Assembly (NCBI RefSeq): GCF_902652985.1
Contig: NC_047015.1
Location: forward strand, 46,934,001-46,998,000
Reading direction: 5' to 3'
From: Pecten maximus
Taxonomy: Eukaryota
DNA: 64,000 nt
The notes beneath the pieces are model-generated. The model had not been told where the DNA came from and did no database searches. It saw nothing but the letters and a program-made list of their open reading frames with translations. Shown here piece by piece: positions 1-24,275 of the stretch. Both the position numbers and the translations under genes were made by a program. The first letter of the stretch is position 1. Every line of letters starts with the position of its first letter.

Positions 1-125
1 ATTAATGAATAATGGTACAAAGACGTATCACTTTCTTCATAACTTATTATTTCCACTCCTATACTGGAAAATGGTTTAACAGAGACTGATAAACATTATG
101 ATTTTATTTGGAAAAAGAAACTTAC

Positions 126-1129
126 TTATGGCAGTTTCTGCAATGATCATCATACTGGATGTTGCCTTCATTCATAATTTCTTCTCTCACATTGTTTGTA
201 ACTAGAAACAGGTCAGTAAGAGTCTTCAAAACTTTAAGTCTCTCTTCAACAGGCACAAAGGGGAATTCTTGATGTTCTAGCGATTCTATTGCCACTTTAT
301 ACTCTGGATATCGGTCAGATTCTGTGTCAAGTAGTGCTCGGATTGATTCTGGCCATGTAAAAGCATCAACAAAGAACAACGATATATTGATGCTGTCCTT
401 CATATCTGAAGGACCAAACGCTGTATTATTACCATCTTCTTCACGCCATAATGCCTTATATAATGTTATATGAATTTCTGTCAGCAGAGAAGAAACTTCA
501 TCACTCAATATTGCCGCACAAAAGTCTTCAAAGGTAAACGGAGATATTCTGAGAATGGTACGGAAATGTCGAAGCACTTCATAAATGCTTAAACTTTGCA
601 TAAGGTTTTCAATCGGTATCAACAAGTCTGTTGAACTGGGAGGCAGGTTTAATGGTGTAATATCTTTGTCATCCAGTAGCTCTGGAGTTTTAGGTCTTCT
701 GCCAAAAAACAATTTTCTTCTACCAGCTGAGCTACCTATAGTACTGAAGCTATCATCACTATAATCTGAATCTGAATCTTCATAACTGGCATCTGAAACT
801 GGTTCGTTCTCATCTAGATCATCAAGAACATCACTCACTTTCTCCTCTGTGTCAAGACTTGATCGCGATTGATCATCATCTTCAAATATCATGTTCTGAA
901 TGAAATGTCTACCTCTTTGTGCAGCCTCACGGGACCTACCCCTCCCTTGTCCCCGCACTGGAGTGCCAGGTGTACTGACCGGCGTACTCGACCGAGAACT
1001 TGGGTCACTTGATGGAGTTCCATGGTTTTGATAGGCTTTGGGCTTTCTCAAAAAAGTACTTCTGGGCCTTACGGATGACAAAGGCGTCTTTGGCGGTCGC
1101 CCTCTTCCGCGTCTTCCTCTAGTGGACAT
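126..1129 (-). CDS. BPTF: Nucleosome-remodelling factor subunit BPTF/NURF301, first coding exon (gene continues beyond the left edge of the window)
   Basis: AT-hook-like RGRGRPPK N-terminus, acidic tract, DDT domain (LSIYEVLRHFRTILRISPFTFEDFCAA), WHIM1-like region and start of a PHD finger (YDDHCRNCH). ATG at 1129; phase-2 donor AA|GTAAG at 126/125. Confidence 0.95.
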
Positions 1130-1244
1130 AATGCACACTTTAAAATAATTCCAGGTGCTCTAATGTTCCCTGCTACTGGAAAAAGGCGGCCCTTGTGCAC
1201 ATCGGCAGCCCTCTATATCGGTTTTAGTGTCCATGTTTCAACTT

Positions 1245-1700
1245 TCGGAAGCCGCCATTTTTCTCCAAATTTGATCACGTGATCAACGCAATCGTAATAT
1301 ACAATGGAAGTCCTACAGTTATGTGCGCCTACCTCGAATTTTCATACAGCAATTTCACGATATTTACCTACACTTTGATGATTGTTATCATTTGAACTTT
1401 TTCGTGTGGTGAAATATAGTGTAAAAGCGACTTAAATCGAATAATGTTATTGTTTCTTTCTGATCCGTCTTTCTCGCACCCGATATAAGAGAAACTCGCA
1501 TTGGACGGTTCATTTTAGACCGCATGCAATCAGAACGTTATTATTATGCCCTCTGGTGCCATGATAAGGTATTTCTCAGTTTCATTTGTATATTTTGAAG
1601 ACACTTAAACAGTCAAAGTGATAGTAGACCTATGTGACACAGTTTTAGGAAGAAATGAAAGTTGTTGTTGCATCTTTTATTGACCAATCAAATTTGACTT
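1245..1700. promoter_or_regulatory. Bidirectional BPTF/AIMP2 promoter region
   Basis: Divergent start codons about 700 bp apart. YY1-like GCCGCCATTT at 1251-1260, perfect 16-bp palindrome TTGATCACGTGATCAA (E-box) at 1271-1286, CCAAT boxes near 1500 and 1684. Confidence 0.65.
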
Positions 1701-1836
1701 TACAAACGGATTGCGTTATTGTTTCATTTGAAACACCTTGGGGGTTTTGATCGTATTCAACCGTAATAAGTTATGTACATAAAGAATGGATAAAAAAGAG
1801 ACTTTCCGAACGTCAAAGCGATCCACATGTGGCAGA

Positions 1837-4800
1837 ATGTCGCAAGTAGATGTAATGTATGAAGTTCAGCCTTATTACGACTCAAATGTTGCCTTAAATT
1901 TGCCAGATAATATGTACAAGCTACCAAATATGCAGACACACACAGGCGATACAGGAAAGGTATGTAGTTGACGACAAAACAGATATTTACTATCGAGTCC
2001 ATCAGTACAGTAACTTGCCGGTGATGACATGTACAGGTGTTTAGAAGTTGAAAATATACTTTGTTGTAATCATATATCGATATATATCCGATTATTTATA
2101 AATACTCTTATGATACATAATCTTATAAAACGTCAACTTGTGTCAAATTATAACAATGGCACCACTTTCGTTTTCTCCACAGGGACAAGTCTACTTGTAG
2201 TGACAAAATAAGCCAATCACAGATACCTATGCGGTCTTTTAGCCATTTATACCTGTAATCATTATATAGAAAAACTCTTACTTTAAGTATTTCTGGTTAA
2301 TATTATCAAATAACAGAAACGTTTCATTGTTTTCTCTAATCAGCTTACAAAATTAAGATTAGTTGTGTATGTAAACCCAAGTAATTATATAAGATTTTGC
2401 CATTTTGTGTCATCCTGTCTTCATCCTTAAATTGGGCCATGGGGTATGGCTTTGGGAGCAAAGATCATGTTTCAGAAGATAAAATATGGTTATACAAATA
2501 ATAATTGTCTCATATGGTATGTAGTTATGGGGCCTGAATAATCCGAAATCAATTAACATTTGGCTGGCAAAAAAAAAATGCATCAGTTGAAGTTATTACC
2601 ACCTTTCCATATTTTATGCATTTTTATACAAAAGTCGTTAAAGATGAAACAAAGCTAGGGATTCTTTTATTATGTTTTGTTAATAGATTCCAAATCACTT
2701 TGGCATTTTAAAATTTCAGGATTTACAAATCTCACATAAGACTTTGTCACTAGTTTGTAGCTCTCCTTAATAAGCAACTTATGTAGTTATTAATATGATG
2801 CCTCTCTATCAATGATGTCCTGACTGCTTGTTCTTTTTGAGTGACAATTCAGAAGTATTGATTAAGAGAACATATCATTTAAATCATTTAACTTTGTAAA
2901 AAGATAAATCCTTGATTGATTATGGAAGCATATATTATGTATCATTAAATCATTTACCTTTACGGAAAATAAATCCTCCATCAATTGCAGAATTTAGAAA
3001 TGGAATCTATTTCATGATCCATCAATATTTTTGTCCATAACTGAGTACCTTTATAACTTACATCTCTGATGCCATGATATGTACTGATACAATGGGTTCT
3101 CCACTGAACAGAAGGTGCAGATGCTAAATTTGCCCTATGAATATGCTTCAGTAAAGTAGATATGAAATACATGGTTAAAAATATATCATCCAAAACTGAC
3201 AAATTTATAGTTATCATTAATTCTATGTGCAGTGACATCATTGTTAAGAAGTTGTCCTGTTTTCAATTGGATGCATTTACCATTAGAAATTATTACTTCT
3301 GTTACACACTAGTTAAAGAAATCTTTTAAGAAAAAATTGGAAAGAAAATCTTCATACCAATTTTTAAAGAACATGCCATAAAAATTAAGGGTGACTGTGT
3401 ATGATTGTTTTTTGCATGTTTGAGTGTGTGTACTATAAGTCCGTCCATAGCACTAAGATATCCTGAACAGATCTAGTTTACGTCAGCACCATTATAGCAT
3501 ACCAAAATCAAATTCTACACCAGACCAGACTGATAGTCATCAGATTAGGTAAAATGGTCAAAGGTCACACTTTACCATTTTGAAAAAAATGTTTTTCAGT
3601 AAATGTACACCATTGACTAATGAGCAAATTGGGGGGATACCTTTTCAAACAGGCCCTTGCTTACCTTCTTTTATATTTCGTGTATCACTGCCTAAAACTC
3701 TTCAAAGATGTATCAGTAAATTCTCATGACACAGAGGAATGTCCCTTTGTTATTTCATATTTGTTGCAGAAGTTTATTAGAATATCTTCATTGCATGTCA
3801 CGCCTAGTTTTTCCGAGATTTTTTTGATTTTCATCTATGCTTTTGGTCTTTTATCCAATTCACTCTTTGTATATAATTCAGGATTACCAGGTCACTATGA
3901 TTGGCCATCTATCACTACGCCATAAAAACATATTTTTTCAGGGATATGGACTTGTGTAGTCCAAAATTATAAATTCAAAGGAAATTACAATTAATGCAGG
4001 AAATGCGTCTCTCTCAAGATTCAAACCTTTTCTAATGGAACATACCCAGTATTATAGTGCATGGGAAATCTGACTATGGGAATATAGATCAATGTTGAAT
4101 GATATATAAATGTTACATTTAGTATATCTTTATTTTTCACATTTTATTCATTGTTTATCTGTCATCCTGTTGCAGATATTGCTGTTTTCCATTGTCTAGC
4201 TTAATTATGTGCTAGCTAATTCATAATCTTCTTATCTGTAGCTGTCCAATAAATTAATTCTTTGTGCACTTATTCGACAGCTACAGTTGATGCTTATGAT
4301 TTCTGCTGGATATAGTACGTAATGGATATGACATCACAGTTGTGTTTTTAACACCAGATGATAGTCACTATAAGCATGTCAGAATACTGTGCTTCCAACA
4401 ATGTCTGCACCATTGCAACTTCCTTTTTTAGGGAAATGGACCTGGGTATAGTGGTGAAAGCTGCAGGTATTTCTTACTAGGTGATTAGGTGGCAAAGGTC
4501 ATGAGTTTAAGGCCCAGTTTAAGGACCCAAGTTGTTAAAATTGTATTCCTTAGTAATTTGTTTTCCTATGTTTATTGTTATATTAATGTTATCATTTGAA
4601 TTTCCTGTTGTAATGGTAAAGTGTTGAATACATTCAGACTTGCCATGGTATAAAAAAGATGCAAAATTTATCAGCACCTTTAAAAATATACAGCAATGAT
4701 GTCACTGCTGCTGCGCTGCCGACGTCCTCAGACAAGGCCATCCCTCATGGTGTGTTTCGACCCTTAGCTTGGTACACTCTTAGGATGTGGGTCCACAGTG

Positions 4801-7800
4801 ATGATCAGTCACTGCTTGGCGGTGGTCGGTGTCCAGCTACTCCCTCTTCATCCATACCCAGCATGAAAATCTTTTTGCTGGCTTGGCAATGCTCTGCACC
4901 GCTGATCTTTTAGTCCTGCTAGGTACTCCCAATGCAGATAGCATTCTCCAGACAGACTGTGTGGGGAAGCCTCTACATCCAACCTCCACTGGGTAGCTCC
5001 ACGTCTGCCACCCTCTCTCCCTGCACTCCACCAGCAATGCTTCATACTTTGCTCTCTTCCTTTCGTGGGCTTCTCTGCACCTTTCCTCCCATGGAGCTGT
5101 AAGCTCTATGACAATGATCTTCTTTGTCGTTGGTAATTTAAGAACCATATCCAGTCTAAGGTTGGTTGGTCTGGAAAAGTTAGTCTCTGGTCAAGGTCTA
5201 CAGTCTCCTGTAGACTGCCTGACTGATGATTCCGGAAGTTCTCTCTGAACTTGGAGTGATGTTTCACCTTCCTTCACAGACCTGATCTGTGTATGTATGT
5301 CTGGTGACCCTGGCTGTTACTAGGATATTAAACAAAATAAACCATAAACAATAGTTGACTGGCCTTGTTTACAAATTAGCCATTGACACAGTAGAAAGTT
5401 ATGAATATAAAACTGCCTAGTGCTAGGACTCATCAGTGATGCGAGGGGCTGATAAGGAAAATAAGAACGACAAAAACAAATCAATATGTTAAGATATAGA
5501 AAACCCTATAATTTTATCTATTTCGTGATACAGTCCTTGGATTACGGATATTGGATTACCGTACGTATTAACGGTATTATACCCCCATCAGTAAAGGTTA
5601 ATGGTCAAAGGTCAAACTTTAACACTTTGAAATGAAACCTCATATACAAAATATTTCATAAATCCTTGAGTAGATTAAAATCATTGCATAACATCACATC
5701 AAATTCTACATCTGATTAGATTTTGGTCGTCGTCGGTCAAATGTAAAAGGTCATGCTTGACCACTTTTGAAATAAAAAAATTTTGTACAAGATATCTCTG
5801 AAAACCTGGATAAAAATAGTTCATATCACACAGTCAAGTTCTACACCTGATTAGGCTTTGGTGGTCATCAGTAAAGATTAAACATGAAAGGCCACACTTG
5901 ACCATTTCTAAATACGAAGCTGGTGTACAATAGATAATTTTACCATGTTTGCTATGTAACGCCGGTTTTGATTGGTTTAAAACCATGTATTATTTTCCAA
6001 TAACCCACGCTCGTGCCAATAATACACGGTCGTGAGTCACGGCTATCACAATTTTAAATATCTAATATTCACCTATTTCATAAAAGGTTACTATAGCCGA
6101 GTGGGCTAATGGGTTAGTCTTTCAATATATTTTTATCACGACGCGAGTTCGAATCCTACGGAGGCCCCCCTTTTTTTCTTTTTCTTTTCTTTTTTTTATC
6201 CCTTTTTTTTTTAATTTTCAAAATCAATGCCATATGATAGATGCTCTTGATCGTAGTACTGTATTGCCTGTATATTTCGAATTCATCAACAAATAATACA
6301 ATACTCAAGAAATAAGGTTTTCCCGGGGTTTCTTTGCTGTTTTTCTATTAGAAAGAGGTCAATCTCAGAACTGAACAGTACATGGTAGAATAGAAATAAT
6401 CAACTTTGACTCGTGAATTGTTGCAGGATATACAACTCGGACTCGGATATTTTGCAATTTTGATTAATAACTCAGGCCTGCGGCCTTCGTTATTAATTTA
6501 ATTGCAAAATATCCTCGTCCTCTATGTATATCCTGCAACAATACACGAATCATCGTTAATTATTTCTTAAATATATATATATATATATATCATGAATTCC
6601 TGGACAGATTTAATTTAATGGTAAGCAGCATATTTCTGACTATTTTGGGGGGAACAAAAACTTTCTAGAAACTGGTAAAAACTAATGCAAAAAGATGTGT
6701 TAAATTAGGGAAAACCTTTCCAATATTACCAGTAGTTTACATTACAGGTTCATTACAATTCAACTCTATATCACCTAATGATGACATAATGATGCCCCTG
6801 CTATTGTCCCACTCTTATTGTAAATGTAGGTCAAGATCTCGAATGCCTTAAAGCCTGTCCAGTTGTATTGAATTATTACAGACTTCATATCACACATAAT
6901 AAAATAAGGTATTGTGTAGTTAGCACACACATCTATATTCCTTGTTGTGTAGAGGTGGGCTTGTTCTGTAGGTAAGAGGTAACCAGATACTGCCCCCCTT
7001 ATACACACCTCCCCCTCCCCTAGCATTCCTACAGAGCTGACAAGCCAGTGCCTCATTGCAGGAGCAGTACAGTCTGCACTGTGTGTCATAGCTTCTTCCA
7101 GAACTCTCTTTGAGAACCCTGCACCGGGATATCACTCTTAACTATCTGCTGTACACTGGAGTGCATATTAATACCAAATACTGTATCAGCTATGGGGAAT
7201 GTCATTAGTTCATGTAAGGAGAAAATTGCACAACCATTTCACAGCAACAAGAAGGCCCGGCAAAGTGATATGTTAGTGAAGGGAAAAAAAGAGCAGGCCA
7301 AGCAAAGTGAATTAGCAGAGGAAAAATCAGAAAAGGCCAAGCAAATTGAATTATTAGCAGAGAAACAAAAAAAGGATGAGCAAAGTGAATTAGTGGAGGA
7401 GAAACAGGAAAAGGCAAAGCAAAGTGAATTATCAGGGGAGAAACAAGAAAAGGCAAAACAAAGTGAATTATCAGGGGAGAAACAAGAAAAGGCAAAGCAA
7501 AGTGAATTATCAGGGGAGAAACAAGAAAAGGCAAAACAAAGTGAATTAGTAAAGGAAAAGCAAAAAGAGGTCAAGCAAAGTGAATTACTGGAGGAGAAAC
7601 AGGAAAATGCAAAGCAAAGTGAATTATTAGAGGAGAAACAAGAAAAGGCAAAACAAATTGAATCAGTAGAGGAAAAACAAGAAAAGGCTAAGAAAAGTGT
7701 TATTTTAGTAGATGAAAAACAGGAAAAGGCCAGACAAAATAATGATTTGAATAAGAACTCTGATCATGAAGTAAATACCAAACAATGTGAAATTCTTCAA

Positions 7801-10800
7801 ACACAACCAATAGCCATGCAGAGTGAAGCTGGACAATCTAAATGTTTAGTTGACCATAGTTGTAAAGAAATGCGTGATGATTTCTCAGATGAAGCTGACA
7901 GAACTGGTGAAGGAGATGATATACAAACCTGTGGATTTAGAGATTACAGTCATGAGGAGGATATTAGTGATTGTAAACACAGTATGAATTTGTCAAAAAA
8001 GATTTATGATAATGAAACTGACAGTTGTAACCCTCATATGTCTCTAGAGAATATACACTTTGGAGATCCCATTCCATCAGAAAAACCTGGAGAAGATACA
8101 AATTCAAAGGTATACCAACGGTCAAATATGGTTTGCCATGTAGGAATAAATGAAGATTACTTTTTTTAATGTTCATTTCAGAGTCTGAGGTTAAATTGCA
8201 GTTGATAGGTCAAATATACAGGTCAAAGGTGCAGAGGTCAAATATATAATCGAAATGACCATAGTTGTAAAGAAATGCGTGATGATTTCTCAGATGAAGC
8301 TGACAGAACTGGTGAAGGAGATGATATACAAACCTGTGGATTTAGAGATTACAGTCATGAGGAGGATATTAGTGATTGTAAACACAGTATGAATTTGTCA
8401 AAAAAGATTTATGATAATGAAACTGACAGTTGTAACCCTCATATGTCTCTAGAGAATATACACTTTGGAGATCCCATTCCATCAGAAAAACCTGGAGAAG
8501 ATACAAATTCAAAGGTATACCAACGGTCAAATATGGTTTGCCATGTAGGAATAAATGAAGATTACTTTTTTTAATGTTCATTTCAGAGTCTGAGGTTAAA
8601 TTGCAGTTGATAGGTCAAATATACAGGTCAAAGGTGCAGAGGTCAAATATATAATCGAAATGATAAAAAAAAAATTGGGAAATGGTGAACAATATTGAAA
8701 GTTTTGCAATGTTATTTATAAATGTTAATACATGTACAAGTTTATAAATTCTACTGTATGTGTGGATCCCGATGTCTTTCTTGAGATGAGAACAGTGGTA
8801 TTGTTATTGAAGCACATCACAAATAACAGGGGTCATGCATTGTAGATTTTATGGTATATTATACACAAGGCTTCTGTTCATGGTGTCACAATCTGTTGCC
8901 CATGATAAGTTTACATATTGTTGAATATTTCACTCAGAAATTCTGTGTACCGAATATGACGGCTTTCATTAACAGGTGTGTATTGTACATAAATCAAGAT
9001 TTTCATCTCACACAGGAATGGTTCATATTGTTAAATTGTTGAACCTGTAGTGTTCATATGGAGGTCAGATAAAATATCAGGTGGAAATTTAATTGGTCAC
9101 GTCATTCACACACTTTAAATAAGCTGTCGGTACAAAAATGCAACTTAATTGTTATGTAATCACAATATTATACAATAGCTCACTGGATTTGTCAAACAGA
9201 CAGTCACATCCAAATGTTTATCTGTAATGTCAATTGTCTAATAACACATGTCTGTGAGGTGAGGGAACTCAATGGTGAACTAGGTAGGGTCATATATATA
9301 TGAATTGTTTTCTTCAAGGATTGCTTACAAGATGGTAGCTATGACTCGCTTTTCTCATCTTATCTAATCACTGGTGCATACAACTCTAGATTGGCTTACA
9401 TTAATCTTCTAGACAGGAACATGTTGGATATACTTCATACAAATCTTAGTATCATAACAAATATTGTTAAAATAAATAATGACTGACGATTCATGGTTCG
9501 TACAGATGATGAAAAGTGCTGGAGTTTGGGGTTAGTGCTGGAAAGGTGCTAGAATGTGGGGTCAGCACTTGAAAAGTACTGGAAATTCATACTTGCTTTA
9601 AACCTGCTTTTTCAGATTGCTTACAAATGAGTAATTATCACAAGAAAATTATAAACAGTTTTTTATCGTCGGCATCATTTACTTTACCCGGTAATTTTCC
9701 ATAATATCCAGATAATGAGCACTTTACCTTTCACATTCTTTATTTCTATCATGTTTTAGTAAAAATTTACCTCAGTTTCCTACAAGTTTGGGTAAAAAAT
9801 TCACCTGGAAAATTTTCAAGTGCTGGAAATGTGCTTGAATTTTAGTATGAAAAATATGGATGAACCATGTGATATGACAAAAATGATGGTGAGTGACTAA
9901 AATAACTAGTATTGTATTAGAATATGAATGTACTAAGTGAGGTTGGCTGTCAACAAGTGGATTACAAGAATTCTATACCATAGGACTGGGTACTTTACTT
10001 TTGACTTTGGTGTTAAGCAACTGCGCAAGTGGGGAATGTCACAGGTTTCTGCCCTCTGTTTGATGTACAGTTTTACACCAGTACATTTCTTACCTCTGTT
10101 TGATGTACAGTTTTACACCATAATGTTTCTGCCCTCTGTTTGATGTACAGTTTTACACCATTATGTTTCTGCCCTCTGTTTGATGTATAGTTTTACACCA
10201 TAATGTTTCTGCCCTCTGTTTGATGTACAGTTTTACACCATAATGTTTCTGCCCTCTGTTTGATGTATAGTTTTACACCATAATGTTTCTGCCCTCTGTT
10301 TGATGTACAGTTTTACACCATAATGTTTCTGCCCTCTGTTTGATGTACAGTTTTACACCATAATGTTTCTGCCCTCTGTTTGATGTAGTTTTACACCATT
10401 ACGTTTCTGCCCTCTTTTTGATGTATAGTTTTACACCAGTACGTTTCTGCCCTCTGTTTGATGTATAGTTTTACACCATTACATTTCTGCCCTCTGTTTG
10501 ATGTACAGTTTTACACGAGTACGTTTCTTCCCTCTGTTTGATGTACAGTTTTACACAAGTACGTTTCTGACCTCTGTTTGATGTACAATTTTACACCATT
10601 ATGTTTCTTCCCTCTGTTTGATGTACATTTTTACACCATTATGTTTCTGCCGTCTGTTTGATGTACAGTTTTACACAAGTACGTTTCTGACCTCTGTTTG
10701 ATGTATAGTTTTACACCATTACATTTCTTCCCTCTGTTTGATGTACAGTTTTACACCAGTACATTTCTTCCCTCTGTTTGATGTATAGTTTTACACCAGT

Positions 10801-13800
10801 ACGTTTCTTCCCTCTGTTTGATGTACAGTTTTACACCATTATGTTTCTTCCCTCTGTTTGATGTACAGTTTTACACCATTACGTTTCTTCCCTCTGTTTG
10901 ATGTACAGTTTTACATGAGTATGTTTCTGCCCTCTGTTTGATGTACAGTTTTACACCATTACGTTTCTGCCCTCTGTTTGATGTAGTTTTACACCATTAT
11001 GTTTCTGCCCTCTGTTTGATTTACAGTTTTACACCATAATGTTTCTGCCCTCTGTTTGATGTACAGTTTTACACCATTATGTTTCTGCCCTTTGTTTGAT
11101 GTACAGTTTTACACCAGTACGTTTCTGCCCTCTGTTTGATGTACAGTTTTACACCAGTACGTTTCTTCCCTCTGTTTGATGTACAGTTTTACACCATTAT
11201 GTTTCTGCTCTTTGTTTGATGTACAGTTTTACACCAGTACGTTTCTGCCCTCTGTTTGATGTACAGTTTTACACCATCATGTTTCTGCCCTCTGTTTGAT
11301 TTACAGTTTTACACCAGTACGTTTCTAATCCCAACTGAAAATATTTCATATTTATGCCTTGTTCCTAGTTTACTGAATTTTTAGGTCACCTGAGACTTAG
11401 CGAATGTTAGGACCTAAAACCCCAAACCAAGCCTCTAGATTAACTACATAGAGGATCTTACAATCATGGCTGTGTTATATTGAATAAATTTATTGAACAA
11501 ATTTAATAATTTCCATATGGCATTGCCACAAGTGTAAGATTTTGTTAGAATATAAGCGGAAACTCTTGAATTACATGTAGTTTCTACATAAGACAGACGA
11601 TTTTCGACTTGGTATGTTTTTCTTAACATCGTGCAATATCACATAGGTATTGTGATGTCATAAAAAGTTGATGACATCACAATAGTGTTGTTCCATATTT
11701 CTTATGATATCTATGGCATACAGTTGTCGTATGATACGGTAGAATGGGCCGGTTATGTGATAGAATTGAGTGGAATGTAATTAAATAAATTACCTATAGA
11801 CAAGATCTAAATGATAGGATAATCCCATCATAGAAAATGTTTTTGTTCAGGGGAGAATAGTTGAAATAGCAGAAATCACATTTAGTTACATATACCAAGA
11901 AAATTACATATTGATATGTAGCGGGACTGGACTGGGTCGATCATCGGTGACCAGGTAGCTCAATTGGTAGAGCATCCGGCTAGTGTTTGGAGGTCCCGGG
12001 TTGGAACCCCGGTCTGGCCGCTTCATTTTCTCCTCTCCTGTTACAGATATATTTGTTTCAGGTCAAAGCAGCCACAGTAGGGGAGGATAATTCAGTAGCA
12101 GTCCTAGAAAATAAACAAACAGATATACTACAGAGACTTGGGGAGTTGAGGGGTGTTCTGGATCAGATAAACATCAAGTATGGCACCACCCCAACGTCGT
12201 CTTCCGGCAAATCCTCTACCATGCTTCTACCGGTGAGTATCAATTCTTCTTGGTTCAGTTGATTAAAAGTCTTCCTTTACCTTGAAAGTGTGGCAGAAAA
12301 AAAGTTAAAACCCGGGAGATGATTAAAATGGGGGATATTTTTTAGGTTCCATCATCCATCTGTCTGTCTGTCATGCTTATCAGTAATTCTGTGCAATTAC
12401 TGCAACAAATATGAACAGATTTTCTTCTAACTTGGTAACAAGGTGTAAAGCCTTAAAGGCTCAGACAAATTCGATCGCCACTTTTGCCAGACATTTGATG
12501 GAATTATGGTCCCTTCATTAACTAAAAACTTTGTTTTCTGCCATTTCTGTGAGATCCAGCTATTAAGAAATTTTCTTCAAACTTCATAAAAAGGTTAAAT
12601 TCCTTAAGGACTAGGCCAACTTAGATTGCCACTTATGCTGGATGTTATTTGGCAGAGTTATGGCCCCTTTATTAGCTGAAAATGGTGTTTTCTGCTGTTT
12701 TCATGCAATAATATCCGATTATTATCTAAGTTTGTGACAGAGTTATCGTTATTGAATCATGAAAATCATTGTTTTTTTGCGGGTAAATAACTCTCTCAAA
12801 AATTTTCCGAAACTTTACTAACTGACGTTACTTAATCCTATATGTTCAATAAAACATCGAACTTCTGTATGAGGCTTTACTTTTTCCTCGAGTTTCAAAC
12901 AATACCTTATAGACGGAATTTTCATTGTCAGGCTGTAATGTCATGTTTACTTCTAACCTCAAAAGTGTTTACTACTTACAATATGTCAGGAAAGTGGGGG
13001 ATATAAATTCCATGAATTTGCTCGTTAACCTAAGGCTAGCTTCAAGCATGGTGTTTGCCATTTAATAATCTCAAAGGCAGGATTGAGGTTTATATATACA
13101 TACATGTATTCCATTTAGTTATCTTTACCAAACTCTCTGCCTGTAAAAAAAACGTGTTCCAAAATGATGGATGTTATATTCTCAATGTTTTTTCCCTAAT
13201 TTAAATCTATTCATCTGTTTTCCTTTTTTATTTGATTGATATTCTCCATCGAAAACAGATTATATCATATTTTATTGTTTCTGCAAACTCACCTTATTGT
13301 TTCTTTCAATTGAATTATCATGACATCATGCTTATATGGTGGCAGGAAAATCTTAAAACAGGTGAATCAGGAGATGATTCTGTTTGATAGCAGAATATTG
13401 AAACTAGTGGGGGAAGGAAAAATTGGAACTGGAGCTGTAAGTAAGGAAATACACATATCTAGATGCATTCATTAGGAAGCAGAGTAAGGAAAGACACATT
13501 ATCTCCCTTTAATTCACTCTCCCTTGTTGTTTACAGGGTGGAGTCGTCCATGACATAGTCATCAATGCTGATCCAGAGAACCCACCCGCCATTGTATTTG
13601 TACTCTACACACTCCTTAAGGAAAGGTGCCAGGTGTACGGATCAAGTCTCGTCCACTCCAGTGTGACCAATGTCCCTGACCAGCTACGTAATATCTTCAG
13701 TGACCAGGATAAATGTACCCGTGGCAACCACCAGGTGGCAATCACAATTATATGGAAAAAAGGTTTGTAAAAGTATATTTCATACCAAAGTTCTGCAAAT

Positions 13801-15344
13801 GTAATCAAGACTTAAAATATGAAGACAGACTGAATATGTTGCTGTGAATTTTTTGTTTTAATGTCTCGGTCTTAATTAGAGCCCAACACGAAAGTGAGGG
13901 TGCCCTATAGTAATCACAGTGTCCATCCGTCTGTTTGGCCATCAGCACTTTTATTTCTGTGTAATAACTTGAGTTTCCTTGGGCTGATCAACCTCAAACT
14001 TCACAAAGTGCTTGATTGGGATTTCTTCTCAGTGTCAAAGGTCAAAGGTCAAGGTCACTTACTATTAGTAGAAAATCAGTTCCCTTGCAATAACATCCTT
14101 TGGACCAATTGAACTCAAACTTCATACATTGGTTTCTTATTGAAAGAATTGCTTTTCAGCATCAAATTTCAGAGAACAAGGTCACTGCTACTAAATATAG
14201 ATAAACAAATCACCTTTCATGTAGTTTGCTTTGGTCAATCTAACTCAAACTTCTTTTAGTAATTCCATATTTCAAGTGTTTGCTAAGAACTGATTTACAG
14301 TGTGAAAGGTCAAGGGTCACTGTTAATATAAGTAGAAAATCAGTTCCCCTGCAATAACACGAGTTTCCTTTGGACCAACTCAAACTTCATACAATGGTTT
14401 CCTATTGAAAGTGCTTGCATGTTCATGATAGACGTCATTCTTGGTGATATGGGCAAATAGCTTCTTGATGATTATGGAGGGGCATGTTGACTTATAAGCT
14501 ATGAAGGTAATTAAAAACATATTCATGGGTGAAAGTGTCAGATTCTTGAAAAACTGAAATGGCTGGTTTTACCCAAAATTTAAGATAGACATGGTGAAAG
14601 ATGTTTCCTGAATACCAAATGAAGTATTATTACCGAACACTTTCATCCATTCATATTGATGACAGTGCAATAAAATTGCCAAGAGAATTAATTGATACAA
14701 AATTTTGATATGTGACATTGACAAACTAACCACATCATCAAATAACTTATTCATATTTAGCCAAGAATCAATTTTGATTATCCAACCGATAGTGAACACC
14801 TATCACAGCTCAAGTCTGGAGGGTAAGTGGATGTTGTTGATATTTGCTTGCCTTGATAATATACAACACAAATTGTTTTCCTTTTATGCTATTTCTATGT
14901 AGTTGAGATTTACTAGAATGATATTATCATTTACTTGTAGTTGAGAACGGCCCAACATTGATAGTCTCACCACACAACCAAACAGCAATCGAGGGGGAAG
15001 CAAATATTGCCAGGTACATCATGCGACTCATCAACCAGGATTATGACAACTCCAACCCTGTAACCACAACACAAGTAGACGATTGGTTAGATTCTGCCCA
15101 GCAACAGCTCCACCAAGGGAACACAAAGGAAAAGGCTGCCGCTGTAAAGTCTCTTAATGCCAGACTTGGACGAAATGATTGGCTTGTAGGATCTGAAATC
15201 TCATTGGCTGATATGGTAATGTGGGCTGCACTGCTCCAAACCTATCAAATGTCCAATGCTCCAAACAATGTGAAAAAGTGGCTGACAGCTTGTGATAAAA
15301 ATTCAGTTTTTCAGTTTGCAAAGACTGTTTTGAATGGAAGGTAA
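1837..15344 (+). CDS. AIMP2: Aminoacyl-tRNA synthetase complex-interacting multifunctional protein 2 (p38/JTV1)
   Basis: Exons 1837-1959, 12062-12232, 13537-13762, 14941-15344, all GT-AG and phase-consistent. N-terminal MYEVQPY...MYKLPN LysRS-binding motifs, coiled coil (LENKQTDILQRL), DIVINADP, IEGEANIARY and a GST-C-like end. Confidence 0.93.
4690..5310 (-). mobile_element. 5'-truncated, decayed RLE-type non-LTR retrotransposon 3' end (HERO/NeSL-like)
   Basis: ORF 4837-5148: (LRLD)MV...IIVIELTAPWEE...ERKRAKY...PVEVGCRGF is the PD-(D/E)xK restriction-like endonuclease signature. The frame is broken upstream and a 3' UTR follows. Confidence 0.85.
5930..6570 (+). mobile_element. Non-autonomous element with long subterminal hairpin (Crypton-like) and an internal tRNA-like segment
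   Basis: Imperfect hairpin about 6420-6545 centred on AGGCCTGCGGCCT. A-box-like TAGCCGAGTGG (about 6094) and B-box GAGTTCGAATCC (about 6145) followed by a T-run. Superfamily assignment is tentative. Confidence 0.45.
7192..8169 (+). CDS. Uncharacterised E/K/Q-rich repeat ORF nested in AIMP2 intron 1 (independent gene or alternative first exon)
   Basis: 978-bp open frame. MGNVISSC fits an N-myristoylation consensus with a nearby Cys. About 11-12 copies of a 13-aa (39-nt) repeat EKAKQSELxxEKQ without frameshifts, followed by about 140 aa of unique acidic sequence. Confidence 0.55.
   Translation: MGNVISSCKEKIAQPFHSNKKARQSDMLVKGKKEQAKQSELAEEKSEKAKQIELLAEKQKKDEQSELVEEKQEKAKQSELSGEKQEKAKQSELSGEKQEKAKQSELSGEKQEKAKQSELVKEKQKEVKQSELLEEKQENAKQSELLEEKQEKAKQIESVEEKQEKAKKSVILVDEKQEKARQNNDLNKNSDHEVNTKQCEILQTQPIAMQSEAGQSKCLVDHSCKEMRDDFSDEADRTGEGDDIQTCGFRDYSHEEDISDCKHSMNLSKKIYDNETDSCNPHMSLENIHFGDPIPSEKPGEDTNSKVYQRSNMVCHVGINEDYFF
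7851..8663 (+). repeat. 405-bp tandem duplication, apparently exact
   Basis: 7851-8255 is repeated at 8256-8660 with TGA microhomology at the junction. This explains ORF 8275-8574. Confidence 0.95.
9492..9869. mobile_element. MITE with short TIRs and internal AAGTGCTGGAA subrepeats
   Basis: Termini CATGGTTC...GAACCATG. Confidence 0.55.
10045..11326 (+). repeat. 40-bp minisatellite, about 32 copies
   Basis: Unit TGTTTGATGTACAGTTTTACACCATTATGTTTCTGCCCTC. Confidence 0.97.
11917..12045 (+). mobile_element. tRNA-containing solo LTR (Helenus-like TRIM)
   Basis: Imperfect inverted ends TGTAGCGGGA...TCCTGTTACA, 4-bp TSD GATA (11913-16 and 12046-49), internal tRNA-like cloverleaf about 11949-12020 with an AGT anticodon. 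Confidence 0.75.
12320..13025. mobile_element. Degenerate Helentron/HINE-like non-autonomous repeat
   Basis: CCAT/CTGT microsatellite head and diverged internal tandem repeats containing ...GTTATGGCCCC... Confidence 0.45.
13855..14490. mobile_element. Degenerate Helentron/HINE-like repeat
   Basis: GTCCATCCGTCTGT head and repeated AACTCAAACTTCA / AAGGTCAAGGTCAC modules. Confidence 0.5.
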
Positions 15345-15918
15345 ACAAATAAACAATATAGGTCAATTGTTTCAGGAGTATATTGCCTGAAATACACATA
15401 ATTTTATATCTGATAACATATTAATATAACAGCACATGCCTCAATAACTTGTTGGAATACATTTTTTGGAATGAACAGGTGTCAGTTTTTGTTGTGTTTT
15501 AATTTATCGTGAAATTTTGTATAAATAATTTGTTTATAGCTCAAAGAAATAATAATATTTCATATAGTTATTAGATCAAAATTTCCTTTAACTGCGATAT
15601 CTTCTCAGGTTTACCGTTAAAACCTGTGTAATTTGCGGAGGTACTTTTTGGGGCTGAAAGTGCTGGAAGAAACCCATCCGTATATATTTTGCGCATGAAA
15701 ACATTTGACCAAAAACCAATGTTCAGGAGGCCCAAAATCAATATATGACTGGTAATCCGATTTTCATCATAAGCCTTGTACATATTCTCATTGTGGTGAA
15801 TACTTGAGCAGTGACACTTTTCACTGATCTTGCCCCTCAAAGCTTGCTATTAAACAGAAACAAAGTTCCAATGTCAAATAGTACATATAGGAGATTTTTC
15901 TTTGATGAGGTCAAAAGT

Positions 15919-16219: not shown

Positions 16220-19200
16220 TCAGCTGACCTTTTCTTTATTTCTGTGATTAAATTTCAATGTTTTCAATAAGATGATGAAAGATCCTGCGACTGTCATTAG
16301 TAGCGTTCCTACCACCACTAGTAATGTGTGGCTGGTTTGACCAACAGGCACTGTTACTTCAATAGCATCAACATCCTGCAAACAAACAAATGTATTAAGA
16401 ATTGTTAAATCTATGACTTCTAACATTTGCATGACAAGCAAACCTACACAGAAGTAATAATGTTTTCAACATTCCACAAACATAAACAATTTGATAAATT
16501 TACATTTCCAAACATGATTTGATGACTTCAAATCCCCCAAACATAATTTGATAACTACAACATCCCCCAAACATAATTTGATGACTTCAACATCCCCCAA
16601 ACATAATTTGATGACTTCAATATCCTCTCAACATAATTTGATGACTACAACATCCCCCAAACATAATTTGATGACTTCAACATCCCCCAAACATAATTTG
16701 ATGACTTAAACATCCCCCAAACATAATTTGATGACTTCAACATCCCCCAAACATAATTTGATGACTTCAACATCCCCGAAACATAATTTGATGACTTAAA
16801 CATCCCCCAAACATAATTTGATGACTTTAACATCCCAAAACATAATTTGATGACTTCAAGATCTCCCAAACATAATTTAATGACTTAAACATCCCCCAAA
16901 CATAATTTGATGACTTCAAGATCTCCCAAACATAATTTGATGACTTCAACATCCCCCAAATGTAATTTGATGACTTAAACATCCTCCAAACATAATTTGA
17001 TGACTTAAACATCCCCCAAACATAATTTGATGACTTTAACATCCCAAAACATAATTTGATGACTTAAACATCCCCCAAACATAATTTGATTACTTTAACA
17101 TCCCCAAACATAATTTGATGACTTAAACATCCCCAAAACATAATTTGATGACTTAAACATCCCCCAAACATAATTTGATGACTTTAACATCCAAAAACAT
17201 AATTTGATGACTTAAACATCCCCCAAACATAATTTCATGACTTCAAATCCCCCAAACATAATTTGATGACTTCAGCATCCCCCAAACATAATTTGATGAC
17301 TTCAAGATCTCCCAAACATAATGTGATGACTTCAGCATTCCCCAAACATAATTTGTTGACTTCAACATCCCCCAAACATAATTTGATGGCTTCAACATTC
17401 CCCAAACATAATTTGATGACTTCAGCATCCCCCAAACATAATTTGATGACTTCAACATCCCCCAAACATAATTTGATGACTTCAACATCCCCCAAACATA
17501 ATTTGATGACTTCAGCTTCCCCCAAACATAATTTGATGACTTCAGCATCTCCCAAACATAATTTGATGACTTCAGCATCCCCCACATCTAATTTGATGAC
17601 TACAACATCCCCCACATCTAATTTGATGACTACAACATCCCTCAAACATAATTTGATGACTACAACATCCCCCACATCTAATTTGATGACTACAACATCC
17701 CCCACATCTAATTTGATGACTACAACATCCCCCAAACATAATTTGATGACTACAACATCCCCCACATCTAATTTGATGACTTCAACATCCCTCAAACATA
17801 ATTTGATTATCAAAAATCAGCCTCTTCTTCAAAACACAAAATATATTGAGTTTTCATATACATATATTAGCACAGTGTAGTACACCTCTAGTTTCTATTA
17901 CTCGGCATAAACTTTACATTATTGTTAGTTTAGAGAATTGAACATCCAAAAAACTTCAGCATGACTTACTGATAAGTATTTGACTACTGTCCATCTACAT
18001 TTGATCAATGTGGCACTTGTACAAGGGAGATCTTCTACACCAATCACAGCTCCAGTGTAATCTGGTTCAATAGGAAGCTTTATATGAATAATCTGGTTCA
18101 ATAGGAAGCTTTATATAAATATATTTATATGGTGATTAAAAGGTGGTTGTGTCACTCAATAAGTACAGCAATGCTTATATGTCAGTACACCACTAAAGTT
18201 TGATTATGTACTTTTACAATGACAATGATGGATAAATTGATCGAATATACATATACATGCAGTGTTTATTGATTTCATGTTTTGAAACTTTGAAAATAAA
18301 TACAACAATAGAATCATTTTATAATGTCAGTACAATAAATGTGATTAGAATAGACCTTTATTGAGTTACTTTAATATGACTTACATAAAAAAAAGAGTCA
18401 ACTTGTGTACAAAGTAATAAAACAACAAGAATCTGGAATGGGGTTACTTCCCCTTAGGCTGTAAACAATATACATGTGTACACTGTAATTATTATTCAAT
18501 ATCTCAAAGACCAGTTTGATTCCCCCAGAACTGTACAATGATATAGTAAGATAGGTATTATCATATACCAGGTATATCATTTGTTAAGTCTGAAGTCTTG
18601 TAAGTGATTATAAGAGATTTACAAGATACATTTGGCCATGGTTATGAAGACAAGTTTACCTTTGGCTGTACAGGATAAAAGAAGCATAGGGTTTGGTATG
18701 ATGACAGATATGTTTTCTGAACTGGACGAGGGTCTGTGATACCGGAGATGTACTGGTATAGTGACACTGGTCATCAGGCTGTCCACATCATCACTCAGAG
18801 GAGATGTATACAAGGAAACATTCAAAGATGGAGCAAGATATTCAGGCTGTTCTACATCCACTGGATTACTGATGAACTACGATAATTACAAAACATATTC
18901 ATTTTACACAAATTGCAAAACAAGTTATATAAACTTATATCAATCACGCCAGGAGTCTTGGTGTGAAACACCAGAGTACCTTGAGAAAACCTATGTGGTT
19001 GGGCAGGTGACTTTTTCATGTTTGATCGTGGAATGGAAAGTGGTATATCTTAACTAATGAAAAAAAGAATGAAATGTAGCAAGATTACCAGAATCTTTTT
19101 TGGAAGTGTTTATTCTAGGAAACTAATGAAACAAAATGCCCATGGGCCTTAACTGTCACCCGAGATTTGAAATATTTCTGTTAATTTAATTGACCCTTTT

Positions 19201-23381: not shown

Positions 23382-23589
23382 TCTGACACAAGAGTATGTA
23401 CACTTACAATAAGAATTACCTAACTGACTGAAATGTTTTGCTTATAATTTAAATCATATTGTTACAGGCTTAGTTTGCAAGTGGTTATAAAGTTAATGAA
23501 AGATAATTGACTAATCAAGCCTGTAAAATTATTGTCTAGGGTTTTGTTAGATTTCTTAGTTTTTGGTGATGAAAATAGCATACATATTT

Positions 23590-24275
23590 ATAAGGATGGG
23601 TGTCAAGTTAATAACAACAGCCATGGTCATATGAGGATGGATATCCAAGTTGATGCCAACAGCCATGGTCATATGAGGATGGATATCCAAGTTGATGCCA
23701 ACAGCCAGGGGCATATGAGGATAGGTGTCCAAGGTGATGCCAACAGCCAGGGTCATATGAGGATGGATGTCCATGCAAGGTGATGCCAACAACCAGGGTC
23801 ATATGAGGAGGGACATCCAAGGTGATGCCAACAGCCAGGGTCACATGAGGAGGGACATCCAAGGTGATGCCAACAGCCAGGGTCATATGAGGAGGGACAT
23901 CCAAGGTGATGCCAACAGCCAGGGTCATATGAGGATGGATGTCCAAGGTGATGCCAACAGCCAGGGGCATATGAGGAGGGACATGCAAGGTGATGCCAAC
24001 AACCAGGGTCATATGAGGATAGGTGTCCAAGGTGATACCAACAGCCAAAAAATGAGGACTTGAGGAGGGGTGTCAAGGTGATGCCAACAGACAGGGTCAT
24101 ATGAGGATGGATATCCAAGGTGATGCCAACAGCCAGGGGCATATGAGGATAGATGTCCAAGCTGATATCAATAGCCCGGGTCACACGAGGATGGGTGTCA
24201 AGGTAATACCAACAGCCAAAAAATGAGGACTTGAGGAGGGGTGTCAAGGTAGTACCAACAGACAGGGTCATATGA
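23590..24275 (+). repeat. About 42-bp minisatellite
   Basis: Unit CCAAGGTGATGCCAACAGCCAGGGTCATATGAGGATGGATGT, about 16 copies. Confidence 0.93.

What the first reader, a model, noticed from the sequence alone, without database searches (positions are those of the whole stretch)
7192..8169. Lipid-anchor repeat ORF in AIMP2 intron 1 may be an alternative first exon giving a membrane-tethered AIMP2
Seen: a same-strand 325-codon ORF starting MGNVISSC, with about 11-12 frame-preserving 13-aa E/K/Q repeats that include synonymous variants (the non-coding minisatellites nearby carry 1-2 nt indels). A donor-like AAG|GTATAC at 8109/8110 lies exactly at phase 0, and AIMP2 exon 2 (12062) is also phase 0, so ...EDTNSK|VKAATVGE... 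would be in frame. Known: MGxxxS is the N-myristoylation consensus, a nearby Cys is often palmitoylated, and AIMP2 exon 1 encodes the LysRS-binding peptide. Inference: this exon could swap the LysRS-binding peptide for an acylated helical stalk, anchoring the multisynthetase scaffold to membranes. It could instead be an independent nested orphan gene. The donor is weak at positions +4 to +6.
Basis: partly seen in the sequence, partly recalled or inferred. Interest (0 to 1): 0.8.

Follow-up and report, generated by a model that had tools for sequence, protein, structure and literature searches.

The report
Alternative lipid-motif first exon of scallop AIMP2
An open reading frame inside the first intron of the scallop AIMP2 gene is a real, transcribed alternative first exon, shared with two other scallop genera, that swaps the lysyl-tRNA-synthetase docking peptide for a possible lipid anchor and a long helix.

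Summary
ORF 7192-8169 (+, 325 codons) starts MGNVISSC. It holds 11.1 in-frame 39-nt repeats and a phase-0 AAG|GTATAC donor at 8109/8110. It lies in the 10-kb intron 1 of AIMP2 (exon 1 1837-1959, exon 2 12062-12232).

- **Transcription:** spliced contigs from three independent data sets cover 7099-8111. In two data sets they begin at 7099. No contig runs on past the donor.
- **Orthologues:** annotated proteins of Ylistrum balloti (611 and 624 aa, named "myb-like protein X") and Mizuhopecten yessoensis (540 aa) have the same layout. It is MG(K/N)xISSC, E/K/Q repeats, then an acidic tail ending ...SK, followed at once by AIMP2 exon 2-4 sequence.
- **What is lost:** these proteins lack the AIMP2_LysRS_bd domain that canonical exon 1 encodes.

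So the fusion model is well supported. The 8109->12062 junction itself was not read in this species. Myristoylation and membrane anchoring rest only on a conserved motif. AlphaFold predicts helices at 18-91 and 101-201. The extension evolves fast (37-38% identity, against 85-91% for the GST-like exons).

I found no paper on such an isoform. I rate it a new variant of a known scaffold, of moderate interest.

The parts
7099..7191 (+). 5' untranslated leader of the alternative first exon; apparent transcript start near 7099
   Evidence: Contigs of X3 and X4/X15 begin at 7099 with no unplaced letters. Bin depth is fully accounted for by that single contig. Bins 6697-7090 are empty in 4 of 4 runs. 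No ATG in 7099-7191. An in-frame TGA lies at 7111-7113, just before the open frame that starts at 7114.
7192..8109 (+). Coding part of alternative first exon (exon 1b), 306 codons, phase 0 at its end
   Evidence: ORF. RNA contigs cover 7099-8111 in pieces. It aligns end to end with residues 1-343 of P0001 and 1-272 of P0009.
7192..7227 (+). Conserved N-terminal peptide MG(N/K)xISSC(K/R)(E/D)KI: candidate N-myristoylation (Gly2, Ser6) and S-palmitoylation (Cys8) site
   Evidence: 8 of the first 12 columns are invariant in alignment A1, against 73 of 306 overall. RNA alleles 7200 T>G and 7202 T>C give MGKAISSC.
7294..7730 (+). 11 in-frame 39-nt (13-aa) E/K/Q-rich repeats
   Evidence: TRF; units in codon register; predicted helical.
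7731..8109 (+). Non-repeat part of the exon; from about residue 202 (about 7795) an acidic Cys/His/Asp-rich tail predicted disordered, ending ...GEDTNSK
   Evidence: pLDDT below 50 for most of 191-306, namely segments 191-229, 232-289 and 300-306. 30-37% identity to the orthologues, with the terminal S-K invariant.
8110..8115 (+). Splice donor GTATAC (exon side AAG)
   Evidence: X4/X15 contig of 185 nt lies on 7941-8111, then has 14 letters that do not fit. No contig covers 8112-8272 in 4 of 4 runs. The orthologues' exon ends at the same residue.
7851..8663 (.). Perfect 405-bp tandem duplication of the exon's 3' part, the donor and 146 nt of intron (second identical donor at 8514/8515). Either very recent or an assembly artefact.
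   Evidence: TRF 2.0 copies, 100% matches. Own-genome search finds the second copy at 8236-8571.
1837..1959 (+). Canonical AIMP2 exon 1 coding part (41 aa), the LysRS-binding peptide that the long isoform lacks
   Evidence: PF16780 at 27.8 bits against a cut-off of 27. PDB AIMP2 peptides 9dpl, 4ycu, 6ild and 4dpg at E 0.008-0.021. Its last 30 letters are joined to exon 2 in X1 and X3 contigs.
12062..12232 (+). AIMP2 exon 2 (57 aa, leucine-zipper region); inferred acceptor for both first exons
   Evidence: RNA contigs lie on 12060-12233 with exon 1 letters before and exon 3 letters behind. It aligns to P0001 344-401 and P0009 273-330, directly after the extension.
13537..13762 (+). AIMP2 exon 3 (thioredoxin-like part of the GST-like domain)
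   Evidence: PF18569, E 1.4e-19; coordinates.
14941..15344 (+). AIMP2 exon 4 coding part with stop (GST C-terminal domain)
   Evidence: PF00043, E 9.7e-8; single copy in the genome.

Best explanation
7099-8109 is an alternative first exon (exon 1b) of the single-copy AIMP2 gene of Pecten maximus. It has its own promoter inside intron 1.

Gene structure:
- Translation starts at the first AUG (7192).
- The exon is spliced from AAG|GT at 8109/8110 to the phase-0 acceptor of exon 2 at 12062. This step is inferred, not read.
- The predicted product is about 572 aa.
- The 41-aa LysRS-docking peptide of canonical AIMP2 is replaced by a 306-aa module. The module has three parts: a conserved MG(N/K)xISSC N-terminus, a helix of about 180 residues built from E/K/Q-rich 13-aa repeats, and a disordered acidic tail.
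- The rest of AIMP2 is unchanged. That is the leucine-zipper region, which in human AIMP2 binds the AIMP1/ArgRS/GlnRS subcomplex, and the GST-like domain, which binds EPRS and AspRS.

This layout is ancestral to at least three scallop genera (Pecten, Ylistrum, Mizuhopecten).

Likely mechanism (inferred, about 50%): Gly2 is N-myristoylated after Met removal and Cys8 is palmitoylated. The isoform would then sit on a membrane and hold a LysRS-free part of the multi-synthetase scaffold at the end of a long helical spacer. Alternatively it competes with canonical AIMP2 for partners.
For: Transcription:
- The laid runs behave as RNA. Contigs join the end of exon 1 to exon 2 (X1, X3) and exon 2 to exon 3, and most of the intron has zero depth.
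- Pieces cover 7099-8111 in X1, X3 and X4/X15. Contigs start at 7099 in X3 and X4/X15.
- One contig stops at 8111 with 14 unplaced letters.
- The two letters past 8109 (GT) equal the first two letters of exon 2. A random next exon would match with chance 1/16.
- 0 of 4 runs have a contig over 8112-8272.

Start codon: there is no upstream ATG in the leader, the context is G at -3 and G at +4, and there is an in-frame TGA at 7111-7113.

Orthologues:
- A HMMER scan of 1.84 billion representatives gave one hit at E<=1e-10: P0001, XP_060074841.1, Y. balloti.
- Searching with P0001 gave P0009, M. yessoensis. It carries two accessions, OWF46474.1 and XP_021361664.1, so I take it as two annotation pipelines giving the same model.
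- In both, the extension abuts AIMP2 exon 2 sequence with nothing between.

Domains: exon 1 has PF16780; P0001 and P0009 do not, but they keep PF18569 and GST_C.

Coding constraint:
- A frame of at least 272 codons stays open in three genera at only 37-38% identity.
- The first 25 residues are 64-72% identical, and Gly2, Ser6, Ser7 and Cys8 are invariant.

Structure: AlphaFold gives coil at 1-17 and helices at 18-91 and 101-201, with block pLDDT up to 93.

Background:
- NMT prefers GXXXS, and ARF6 with Lys3 is a known substrate (PMC7044312, passages).
- AIMP2 partner map (PMC6760448, passages).
Against: Junction not seen:
- No joint 8109->12062 was listed. All loose ends shown before 12060 are exon 1.
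- The 14-letter tail was not displayed, and read laying has a single call.
- The donor is weak at +4 to +6.

Weak signs of constraint:
- Polymorphism gives no clear sign of purifying selection. Of 12 differences between RNA contigs and the reference, 3 are synonymous, 8 non-synonymous and 1 nonsense. The nonsense change is 7420 C>T, in one X3 contig, depth 4.8 of 15, inside the repeat array. A 1-nt deletion at 7741 has depth 2 of 13.7. The synonymous-site fraction is 0.171.
- Repeat differences fall almost evenly on the codon positions (17/16/23).
- GC3 is 0.28, like the intron, against 0.39-0.52 in the other AIMP2 exons.

Motif: the RNA allele and Y. balloti have Lys3, which fails the recalled PROSITE-type pattern.

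Other limits:
- The orthologous proteins are computational models. Whether RNA supports their junctions is unknown to me.
- No protein from this genome containing the exon is in the collection.
- AlphaFold helices for E/K-rich low-complexity sequence are weak evidence (mean pLDDT 61, pTM 0.24, 4-row alignment).
Confidence: 0.78

Rival explanations
1. Independent nested gene. The transcript from 7099 encodes its own protein, either the unspliced 325-aa ORF ending at 8167-8169 or the 306 codons spliced to a private downstream exon. It only shares the intron with AIMP2.
For: It has its own transcript start. The ORF closes 19 codons after the donor, and an AATAAA lies at 8145-8150. No 8109->12062 joint was listed. 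NCBI names the Y. balloti protein after an unrelated low-complexity protein.
Against: 0 of 4 runs have any contig over 8112-8272, so the unspliced form is not seen. One contig breaks exactly at the donor. Three orthologous models from two genera continue into AIMP2 exon 2. No other covered exon of comparable depth was seen between 8273 and 11800. The few pieces there are short and shallow or lie on repeats.
Confidence: 0.08
2. Transcribed but not functional as protein. An intronic promoter drives a repeat-rich RNA whose open frame is tolerated rather than selected, and the long AIMP2 models in other scallops are products of gene predictors that seek an ATG.
For: The pN/pS estimate of about 0.6 rests on 12 differences and is not distinguishable from 1. 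There is a possible nonsense allele and a possible 1-nt deletion allele. Base composition is intron-like. No Pfam family matches. No homologue outside scallops was found.
Against: At 37-38% amino-acid identity, an unselected frame of 272-343 codons would not stay open in three genera with the same first eight residues and the same last two residues before the splice. P(open) is about 7e-5 for the non-repeat part in this genome alone. The M. yessoensis model carries two accessions, which I read as two pipelines.
Confidence: 0.1
3. Internal cassette exon. AIMP2 exon 1 splices into the region near 7102 (cttcttccag|aac looks like an acceptor), so that the repeat module is inserted after the LysRS-binding peptide rather than replacing it.
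For: An acceptor-like pyrimidine tract with AG lies at 7092-7101, exactly where the contigs begin.
Against: The contigs start at 7099 with record position 1 and no unplaced letters. The bin depth equals that one contig in X3 and X4, so no second, partly laid contig exists there. The ORF's frame has TGA at 7111-7113. Orthologous proteins start with Met-Gly at the homologous position.
Confidence: 0.03

Closest known systems
Canonical AIMP2 (p38/JTV-1), scaffold of the multi-tRNA-synthetase complex
   Same: Exons 2-4 are shared. These are the leucine-zipper region, the thioredoxin-like domain (PF18569) and GST_C. The M. yessoensis long form matches human AIMP2 GST-domain structures 5a34, 5a1n and 6iy6 at E of about 1e-44.
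   Different: The N-terminal KRS-binding peptide (PF16780; human Gly2-Pro33 per PMC6760448, passages) is replaced by a 306-aa module with no family match.
Human AIMP2-DX2 splice variant
   Same: It is an isoform of the same scaffold that removes one partner-binding region while keeping the GST domain (PMC6760448, passages).
   Different: DX2 skips exon 2 and keeps the N-terminal peptide. The scallop form keeps exon 2, loses exon 1, and gains a large new module from an alternative promoter.
Plasmodium tRip, a membrane-bound AIMP-type scaffold that anchors synthetase complexes
   Same: It is a GST-like scaffold of synthetase complexes attached to a membrane (PMC9136112; search listing and start of abstract only).
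   Different: By my recollection, tRip is an AIMP1/Arc1p-type protein with a membrane-spanning segment. Here the attachment would be by acylation of an AIMP2-type protein, and it is untested. There is no sequence relation in the anchor.
ARF6-type Gly2-Lys3 N-myristoylated N-termini
   Same: G-K-x-x-S at the N-terminus, as in the RNA allele and in Y. balloti. NMT prefers GXXXS and ARF6 is a known substrate (PMC7044312, passages).
   Different: There is no GTPase domain or other relation. Acylation of the scallop peptide is not shown.
Soluble/membrane isoform pairs made by alternative first exons that add a myristoylation signal (e.g. NADH-cytochrome b5 reductase; recalled, no call)
   Same: The same genetic device: two promoters and first exons, one giving an MG... 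N-terminus.
   Different: A different protein family. Here the swapped-out exon is itself a docking peptide, so partner choice changes as well as location.

Membership tests
AIMP2 (long isoform as a product of the AIMP2 gene) | Thioredoxin-like plus GST C-terminal domains of AIMP2 downstream on the same strand, in a single-copy gene | tested here: met
   PF18569 at E 1.4e-19 and PF00043 at E 9.7e-8 on exons 3 and 4. One genomic match for exon 4.
AIMP2 (long isoform as a product of the AIMP2 gene) | Splice junction joining exon 1b (8109) to exon 2 (12062) in this species | tested here: inconclusive
   One contig breaks at 8111 with 14 unseen letters, and no joint is listed. The orthologous proteins show the junction.
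AIMP2 (long isoform as a product of the AIMP2 gene) | N-terminal LysRS-binding domain (PF16780) | tested here: not met
   Present in exon 1 (27.8 bits, cut-off 27). Absent from exon 1b (0 families) and from P0001 and P0009. This is the point of the isoform, not an argument against the gene assignment.
N-myristoylated proteins | Gly at position 2 and a small residue (Ser/Thr) at position 6 | tested here: met
   G2 and S6 are invariant in all 4 aligned sequences, which represent 3 species. The GXXXS preference is from PMC7044312 (passages).
N-myristoylated proteins | No charged, aromatic or Pro residue at position 3 (PROSITE-type pattern, recalled from memory) | tested here: inconclusive
   The reference allele and M. 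yessoensis (Asn3) pass. The RNA allele and both Y. balloti isoforms (Lys3) fail. ARF6 with Lys3 is nevertheless an NMT substrate.
N-myristoylated proteins | Demonstrated lipid attachment or membrane association | not testable with these tools
   Needs metabolic labelling or fractionation.
Dual-acylated (myristoyl + palmitoyl) anchors | Cys close to the myristoylated Gly | tested here: met
   Cys8 is invariant. No strict consensus exists. By my recollection, classical cases have Cys at 3-6, so the position is atypical.
Single alpha-helix (ER/K) or coiled-coil spacers | Long uninterrupted helix rich in E/K | tested here: inconclusive
   AlphaFold gives helices at 18-91 and 101-201 with block pLDDT up to 93, but pTM is 0.24 and the alignment has 4 rows. 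I did not resolve whether it is a single helix, a hairpin or a coiled coil. The 13-residue period is not heptad-like (my inference).

The most novel reading that the evidence does not exclude
Scallops make, from a second promoter, a lipid-anchored AIMP2 that cannot dock LysRS. It would still carry the AIMP1/ArgRS/GlnRS and EPRS/AspRS binding regions, held up to about 27 nm from the membrane by a rigid E/K helix. That figure is my arithmetic: 184 residues at 0.15 nm each, if the helix is single and extended. The result would be a membrane-bound partial multi-synthetase complex in an animal, made by acylation, conserved across Pectinidae, and useful for local translation or for regulated release of synthetases.
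Probability: 0.3. Interest if true: 0.75.

Novelty: new variant of a known kind. Interest (0 to 1): 0.55.

Why it matters
AIMP2 is the hub of the animal multi-synthetase complex. Its N-terminal peptide holds LysRS, and release of LysRS is a signalling step in mammals.

A natural, conserved isoform that deletes exactly that peptide and adds a putative lipid anchor and spacer would be a ready-made experiment on three questions:
- what the scaffold does without LysRS;
- whether synthetase complexes are placed at membranes in animals;
- how a minisatellite-like repeat becomes a coding module.

There is also a practical annotation point. The homologous proteins are filed in public databases under uninformative names ("myb-like protein X", "uncharacterized protein"). 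No protein with this exon from this genome was found in the collections I searched.

Tried and rejected
- **Whole-ORF word-index search.** No hit among 8000 scored candidates. The blank is uninformative. P0009 (540 aa) lies in the allowed length range yet was missed, probably because low-complexity words flooded the candidate list.
- **Tail-only search (residues 205-332 of the 351-aa open frame).** 392 candidates, none scored. The orthologues share too few exact 5-residue words there. It shows only that no near-identical protein of 193-614 aa from this genome is in the collection.
- **Pfam on the ORF.** 0 families at E<=1.
- **Paralogues in the genome.** There were 23 matches. Two are the ORF and its 405-bp duplicate. 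The other 21 are E/K-rich low-complexity hits at 19-34% identity, 12 of them with internal stops. I rejected a repeat-family or transposon origin. 6700-7300 is unique in the genome.
- **The other 6 hits of the representative scan (P0002-P0007, E 7e-6 to 5e-4).** I inspected only P0002, a repeat-rich protein with no AIMP2 part. I treated all six as composition matches.
- **Orthologous DNA.** I therefore have no sister-species loci, no dN/dS, and no check that their exon lies in AIMP2 intron 1.
- **Depth comparison of exon 1b with exon 2.** Not used, because the tool states that contig depths cannot rank parts of a gene.
- **Second donor at 8514.** It cannot be told from 8109 because the copies are identical. 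Reading through from 7192 meets the stop at 8167, so only 8109 gives the long protein without a further splice.
- **Spliced model.** The 572-aa length is arithmetic from exon lengths.
- **Literature.** "AIMP2" + "myristoylation" gave 7 papers, none on an acylated AIMP2 isoform by title or abstract start. "AIMP2" + "alternative first exon" gave 1 paper, a cancer splicing review. "multi-synthetase complex" + "membrane-anchored" + "scaffold" gave 2 unrelated papers. "AIMP2" + "scallop" gave 0.
- **Supplements.** They were closed. The 67,741 Augustus gene models of the P. maximus paper (PMC7191990, passages) are not in the text I could read. Whether the authors' own annotation holds the long isoform is unknown.

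Full report
**What is in the sequence**

It runs 7192..8169 on the + strand, is 325 aa long, and starts MGNVISSC.

Tandem Repeats Finder gives a 39-nt unit in 11.1 copies at 7295-7730, with 81% matches and no indels. Cut in codon register, the array is 11 units of 13 aa with consensus KAKQSELLEEKQE. Three units at 7411-7527 are nearly identical.

The exon-like part, 7192-8109, is 918 nt (306 codons). It ends AAG|GTATAC, which is phase 0.

The ORF's stop-free frame of 351 codons is the longest in the window on either strand. Its 160 codons outside the repeat would stay open with P of about 7e-5, at the intron's stop frequency of 0.058. Openness inside the array is no evidence, because two minus-strand ORFs also run through it.

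TRF reports 0% indels in the neighbouring 40-nt and 30-nt arrays too.

It repeats the exon's 3' end, the donor and 146 nt of intron.

**The host gene**

- Exon 1 (coding 1837-1959, 41 aa) ends GDTGK|gtatgt in phase 0. It matches Pfam AIMP2_LysRS_bd (27.8 bits, cut-off 27) and the AIMP2 peptides in PDB entries 9dpl, 4ycu, 6ild and 4dpg (E 0.008-0.021).
- Exon 2 is 12062-12232.
- Exon 3 is 13537-13762 (PF18569).
- Exon 4 is 14941-15344 (GST_C).
- The gene is single-copy.

The assembly size and contig count, 918,306,378 bases in 3,983 pieces, equal those printed for the Pecten maximus assembly (PMC7191990, passages). I therefore take the genome to be P. maximus.

**Transcription**

Twenty public runs from 8 studies of one organism hold 8-45% of the sampled words of 7100-8260. 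None is on record as RNA. I laid four of them (X1, X3, X4, X15) on 6500-12400. X4 and X15 give the same contigs and look like one data set filed twice, so there are three independent data sets.

The runs behave as RNA:
- Contigs carry exon 2 with the last 30 letters of exon 1 in front (X1, X3) and exon 3 letters behind.
- Most of the intron has zero depth.

Over the finding:
- Pieces lie on 7099-7446, 7506-7638 and 7941-8111 (X4/X15).
- Six pieces lie between 7099 and 7869 (X3).
- Pieces lie on 7186-7415 and 7647-8080 (X1).
- In X3 and X4/X15 the first contig begins at 7099 with no unplaced letters, and it alone accounts for the bin depth.
- Bins 6697-7090 are empty in 4 of 4 runs. This fits a transcript start near 7099.
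- The leader 7099-7191 has no ATG. The start context is G at -3 and G at +4. TGA at 7111-7113 closes the frame upstream.

At the 3' end:
- A 185-nt contig (X4/X15, depth 2.7) lies on 7941-8111 and then has 14 letters that do not fit.
- No contig covers 8112-8272 in any run.
- So the RNA leaves the genome sequence at the predicted donor.
- The tool listed no joint, since a 14-letter side is too short to place. Those letters were among the 44 loose ends not shown.
- The alignment runs two letters (GT) past 8109. That is what a junction to exon 2 (which begins GT) would give, and it has a 1/16 chance otherwise.

**Relatives**

The first word-index search was blank. The all-against-one HMMER scan of 1.84 billion representatives gave 7 hits at E<=0.001 and one at E<=1e-10. 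That one is P0001, 611 aa, E 2.5e-17.

- P0001 is XP_060074841.1, "myb-like protein X isoform X2" of Ylistrum balloti. Isoform X1 (P0008, 624 aa) differs by one 13-aa unit.
- Searching with P0001 returned 3 proteins among 8000 scored candidates: itself, P0009 (540 aa, Mizuhopecten yessoensis) and a 337-aa cockroach AIMP2.
- P0009 carries accessions OWF46474.1 and XP_021361664.1. I read that as two annotation pipelines giving the same model.
- Both species belong to Pectinidae.

All three scallop proteins begin MG(K/N)xISSC(K/R)(E/D)KI. They continue with E/K/Q-rich repeats and an acidic tail, and end ...SK. AIMP2 exon 2-4 sequence follows directly.

In pairwise alignments the window's exon 1b covers residues 1-343 of P0001 and 1-272 of P0009. 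The window's exon 2 covers 344-401 and 273-330. Nothing lies between them. Neither long protein has PF16780. Both have PF18569 and GST_C.

| Region | Identity to the orthologues |
|---|---|
| Exon 1b, whole | 37-38% |
| Exon 1b, first 25 residues | 64-72% |
| Exon 2 | 65-69% |
| Exons 3 and 4 | 85-91% |

In alignment A1, 73 of 306 columns are invariant, including 8 of the first 12 (M1, G2, I5, S6, S7, C8, K11, I12) and the last two residues, S305 and K306.

Three things argue that the exon is translated and spliced to exon 2 in this family:
- A frame of at least 272 codons stays open at this divergence.
- The first eight residues are nearly the same in all three genera.
- The end phase is the same.

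No other long AIMP2 form appeared outside scallops.

**Evidence that cuts the other way**

- The RNA contigs differ from the reference at 12 places in the exon: 3 synonymous, 8 non-synonymous and 1 nonsense.
- The nonsense change is 7420 C>T, in one 71-nt X3 contig inside the repeat array, at depth 4.8 of 15.
- One X3 contig, depth 2 of 13.7, lacks a base at 7741.
- With a synonymous-site fraction of 0.171, this gives pN/pS of about 0.6 on very few events. Within-species constraint is therefore not shown.
- Differences among repeat units fall 17/16/23 on the three codon positions.
- GC3 is 0.28, intron-like.
- No protein of this genome with the exon is in the collections.

**The N-terminus**

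All RNA data sets carry 7200 T>G and 7202 T>C. These turn the reference's MGNVISSC into MGKAISSC, the same as in Y. balloti.

- Gly2, Ser6 and Cys8 are invariant.
- NMT prefers GXXXS (PMC7044312, passages).
- The Asn3 forms pass a PROSITE-type pattern that I recalled from memory. The Lys3 forms fail it.
- The same paper describes ARF6, a known NMT substrate, as having Lys3 after the N-terminal Gly.

Myristoylation is therefore plausible but unproven. Palmitoylation of Cys8 is weaker still.

**Predicted structure**

AlphaFold on the 4-row alignment gives these segments:
- coil at 1-17;
- helices at 18-91 and 101-201, with block pLDDT up to 93;
- low confidence and no regular structure after 201.

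Overall confidence is modest, with mean pLDDT 61.4 and pTM 0.24. This fits a spacer helix, but such predictions are cheap for E/K-rich sequence.

**How it most likely works**

Shown or well supported:
- a second promoter in intron 1;
- an exon with the first AUG at 7192;
- a break at the 8109 donor;
- conservation of the module-AIMP2 fusion in two other genera;
- loss of the LysRS-binding domain.

Inferred:
- the junction to 12062 in this species;
- translation;
- acylation;
- membrane binding.

In human AIMP2 the N-terminal region binds the KRS dimer, the leucine zipper binds the AIMP1/ArgRS/GlnRS subcomplex, and the GST domain binds EPRS and AspRS (PMC6760448, passages). The long isoform should therefore keep the last two sets of partners and lose LysRS. 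If acylated, it would place them at a membrane. If not, it would still be a LysRS-free competitor of the canonical scaffold.

**Comparison and novelty**

- The nearest thing in kind is the human DX2 isoform, which removes a different region.
- The nearest in idea is Plasmodium tRip, a membrane protein that anchors synthetase complexes (PMC9136112; listing and abstract start only).
- The genetic device, alternative first exons that add an MG... signal, is familiar. I recall the example of cytochrome b5 reductase; no call supports it.
- Four literature searches found no description of an acylated or alternative-first-exon AIMP2.
- The homologous proteins already sit in public databases under uninformative names.

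I class it as a new variant of a known kind, of moderate interest.

Noticed in passing
window 7851-8663: Perfect 405-bp tandem duplication (2.0 copies, 100% matches) that copies the 3' part of exon 1b, its donor and 146 nt of intron. It is either very recent or an assembly artefact. It creates a second identical donor at 8514.
   Followed up: partly
window 11917-12045: A tRNA-Thr(AGT)-like sequence lies at 11949-12021 (ARAGORN), inside a short element just upstream of the exon 2 acceptor. RNA contigs pile up here (summed depth about 670 to 15,700) with many different flanks. It is therefore a high-copy, transcribed SINE-like family.
   Followed up: partly
window 10045-11326: 40-nt minisatellite, 32.2 copies, 91% matches, no indels, in AIMP2 intron 1. 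A few short RNA contigs lie on it.
   Followed up: no
window 125-1138 (-): A large minus-strand exon encodes a DDT domain (E 9e-17) and a WHIM1 motif. It is a BAZ/BPTF-type chromatin protein gene, head to head with AIMP2 about 700 nt from its exon 1.
   Followed up: partly
window 27318-28516 (+): A Snf7-family (CHMP-type) gene lies downstream of AIMP2. Its first coding exon starts MGRSSSKP, another Met-Gly N-terminus. Snf7 matches on two exons are below the curated cut-off (20.5 and 25.3 bits against 27.3).
   Followed up: partly
window 16518-17877, 23511-24223, 34405-36100 (+): Three long arrays read as open peptide repeats: SPKHNLMT-type over 215 codons, QGDANSQGHMRMD-type, and YRYHKDD-type, the last open in several frames. 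They are probably non-coding minisatellites between genes. I did not check them.
   Followed up: no
window 7200, 7202: The reference individual carries Asn3-Val4. All laid RNA data sets carry Lys3-Ala4 (two linked non-synonymous changes), identical to Ylistrum balloti. The reference allele may be the rarer one.
   Followed up: partly
window 6400-6560: A palindromic stretch, MITE-like by eye, lies about 550 nt upstream of the apparent start of exon 1b. One shallow X4 contig touches 6500-6696.
   Followed up: no
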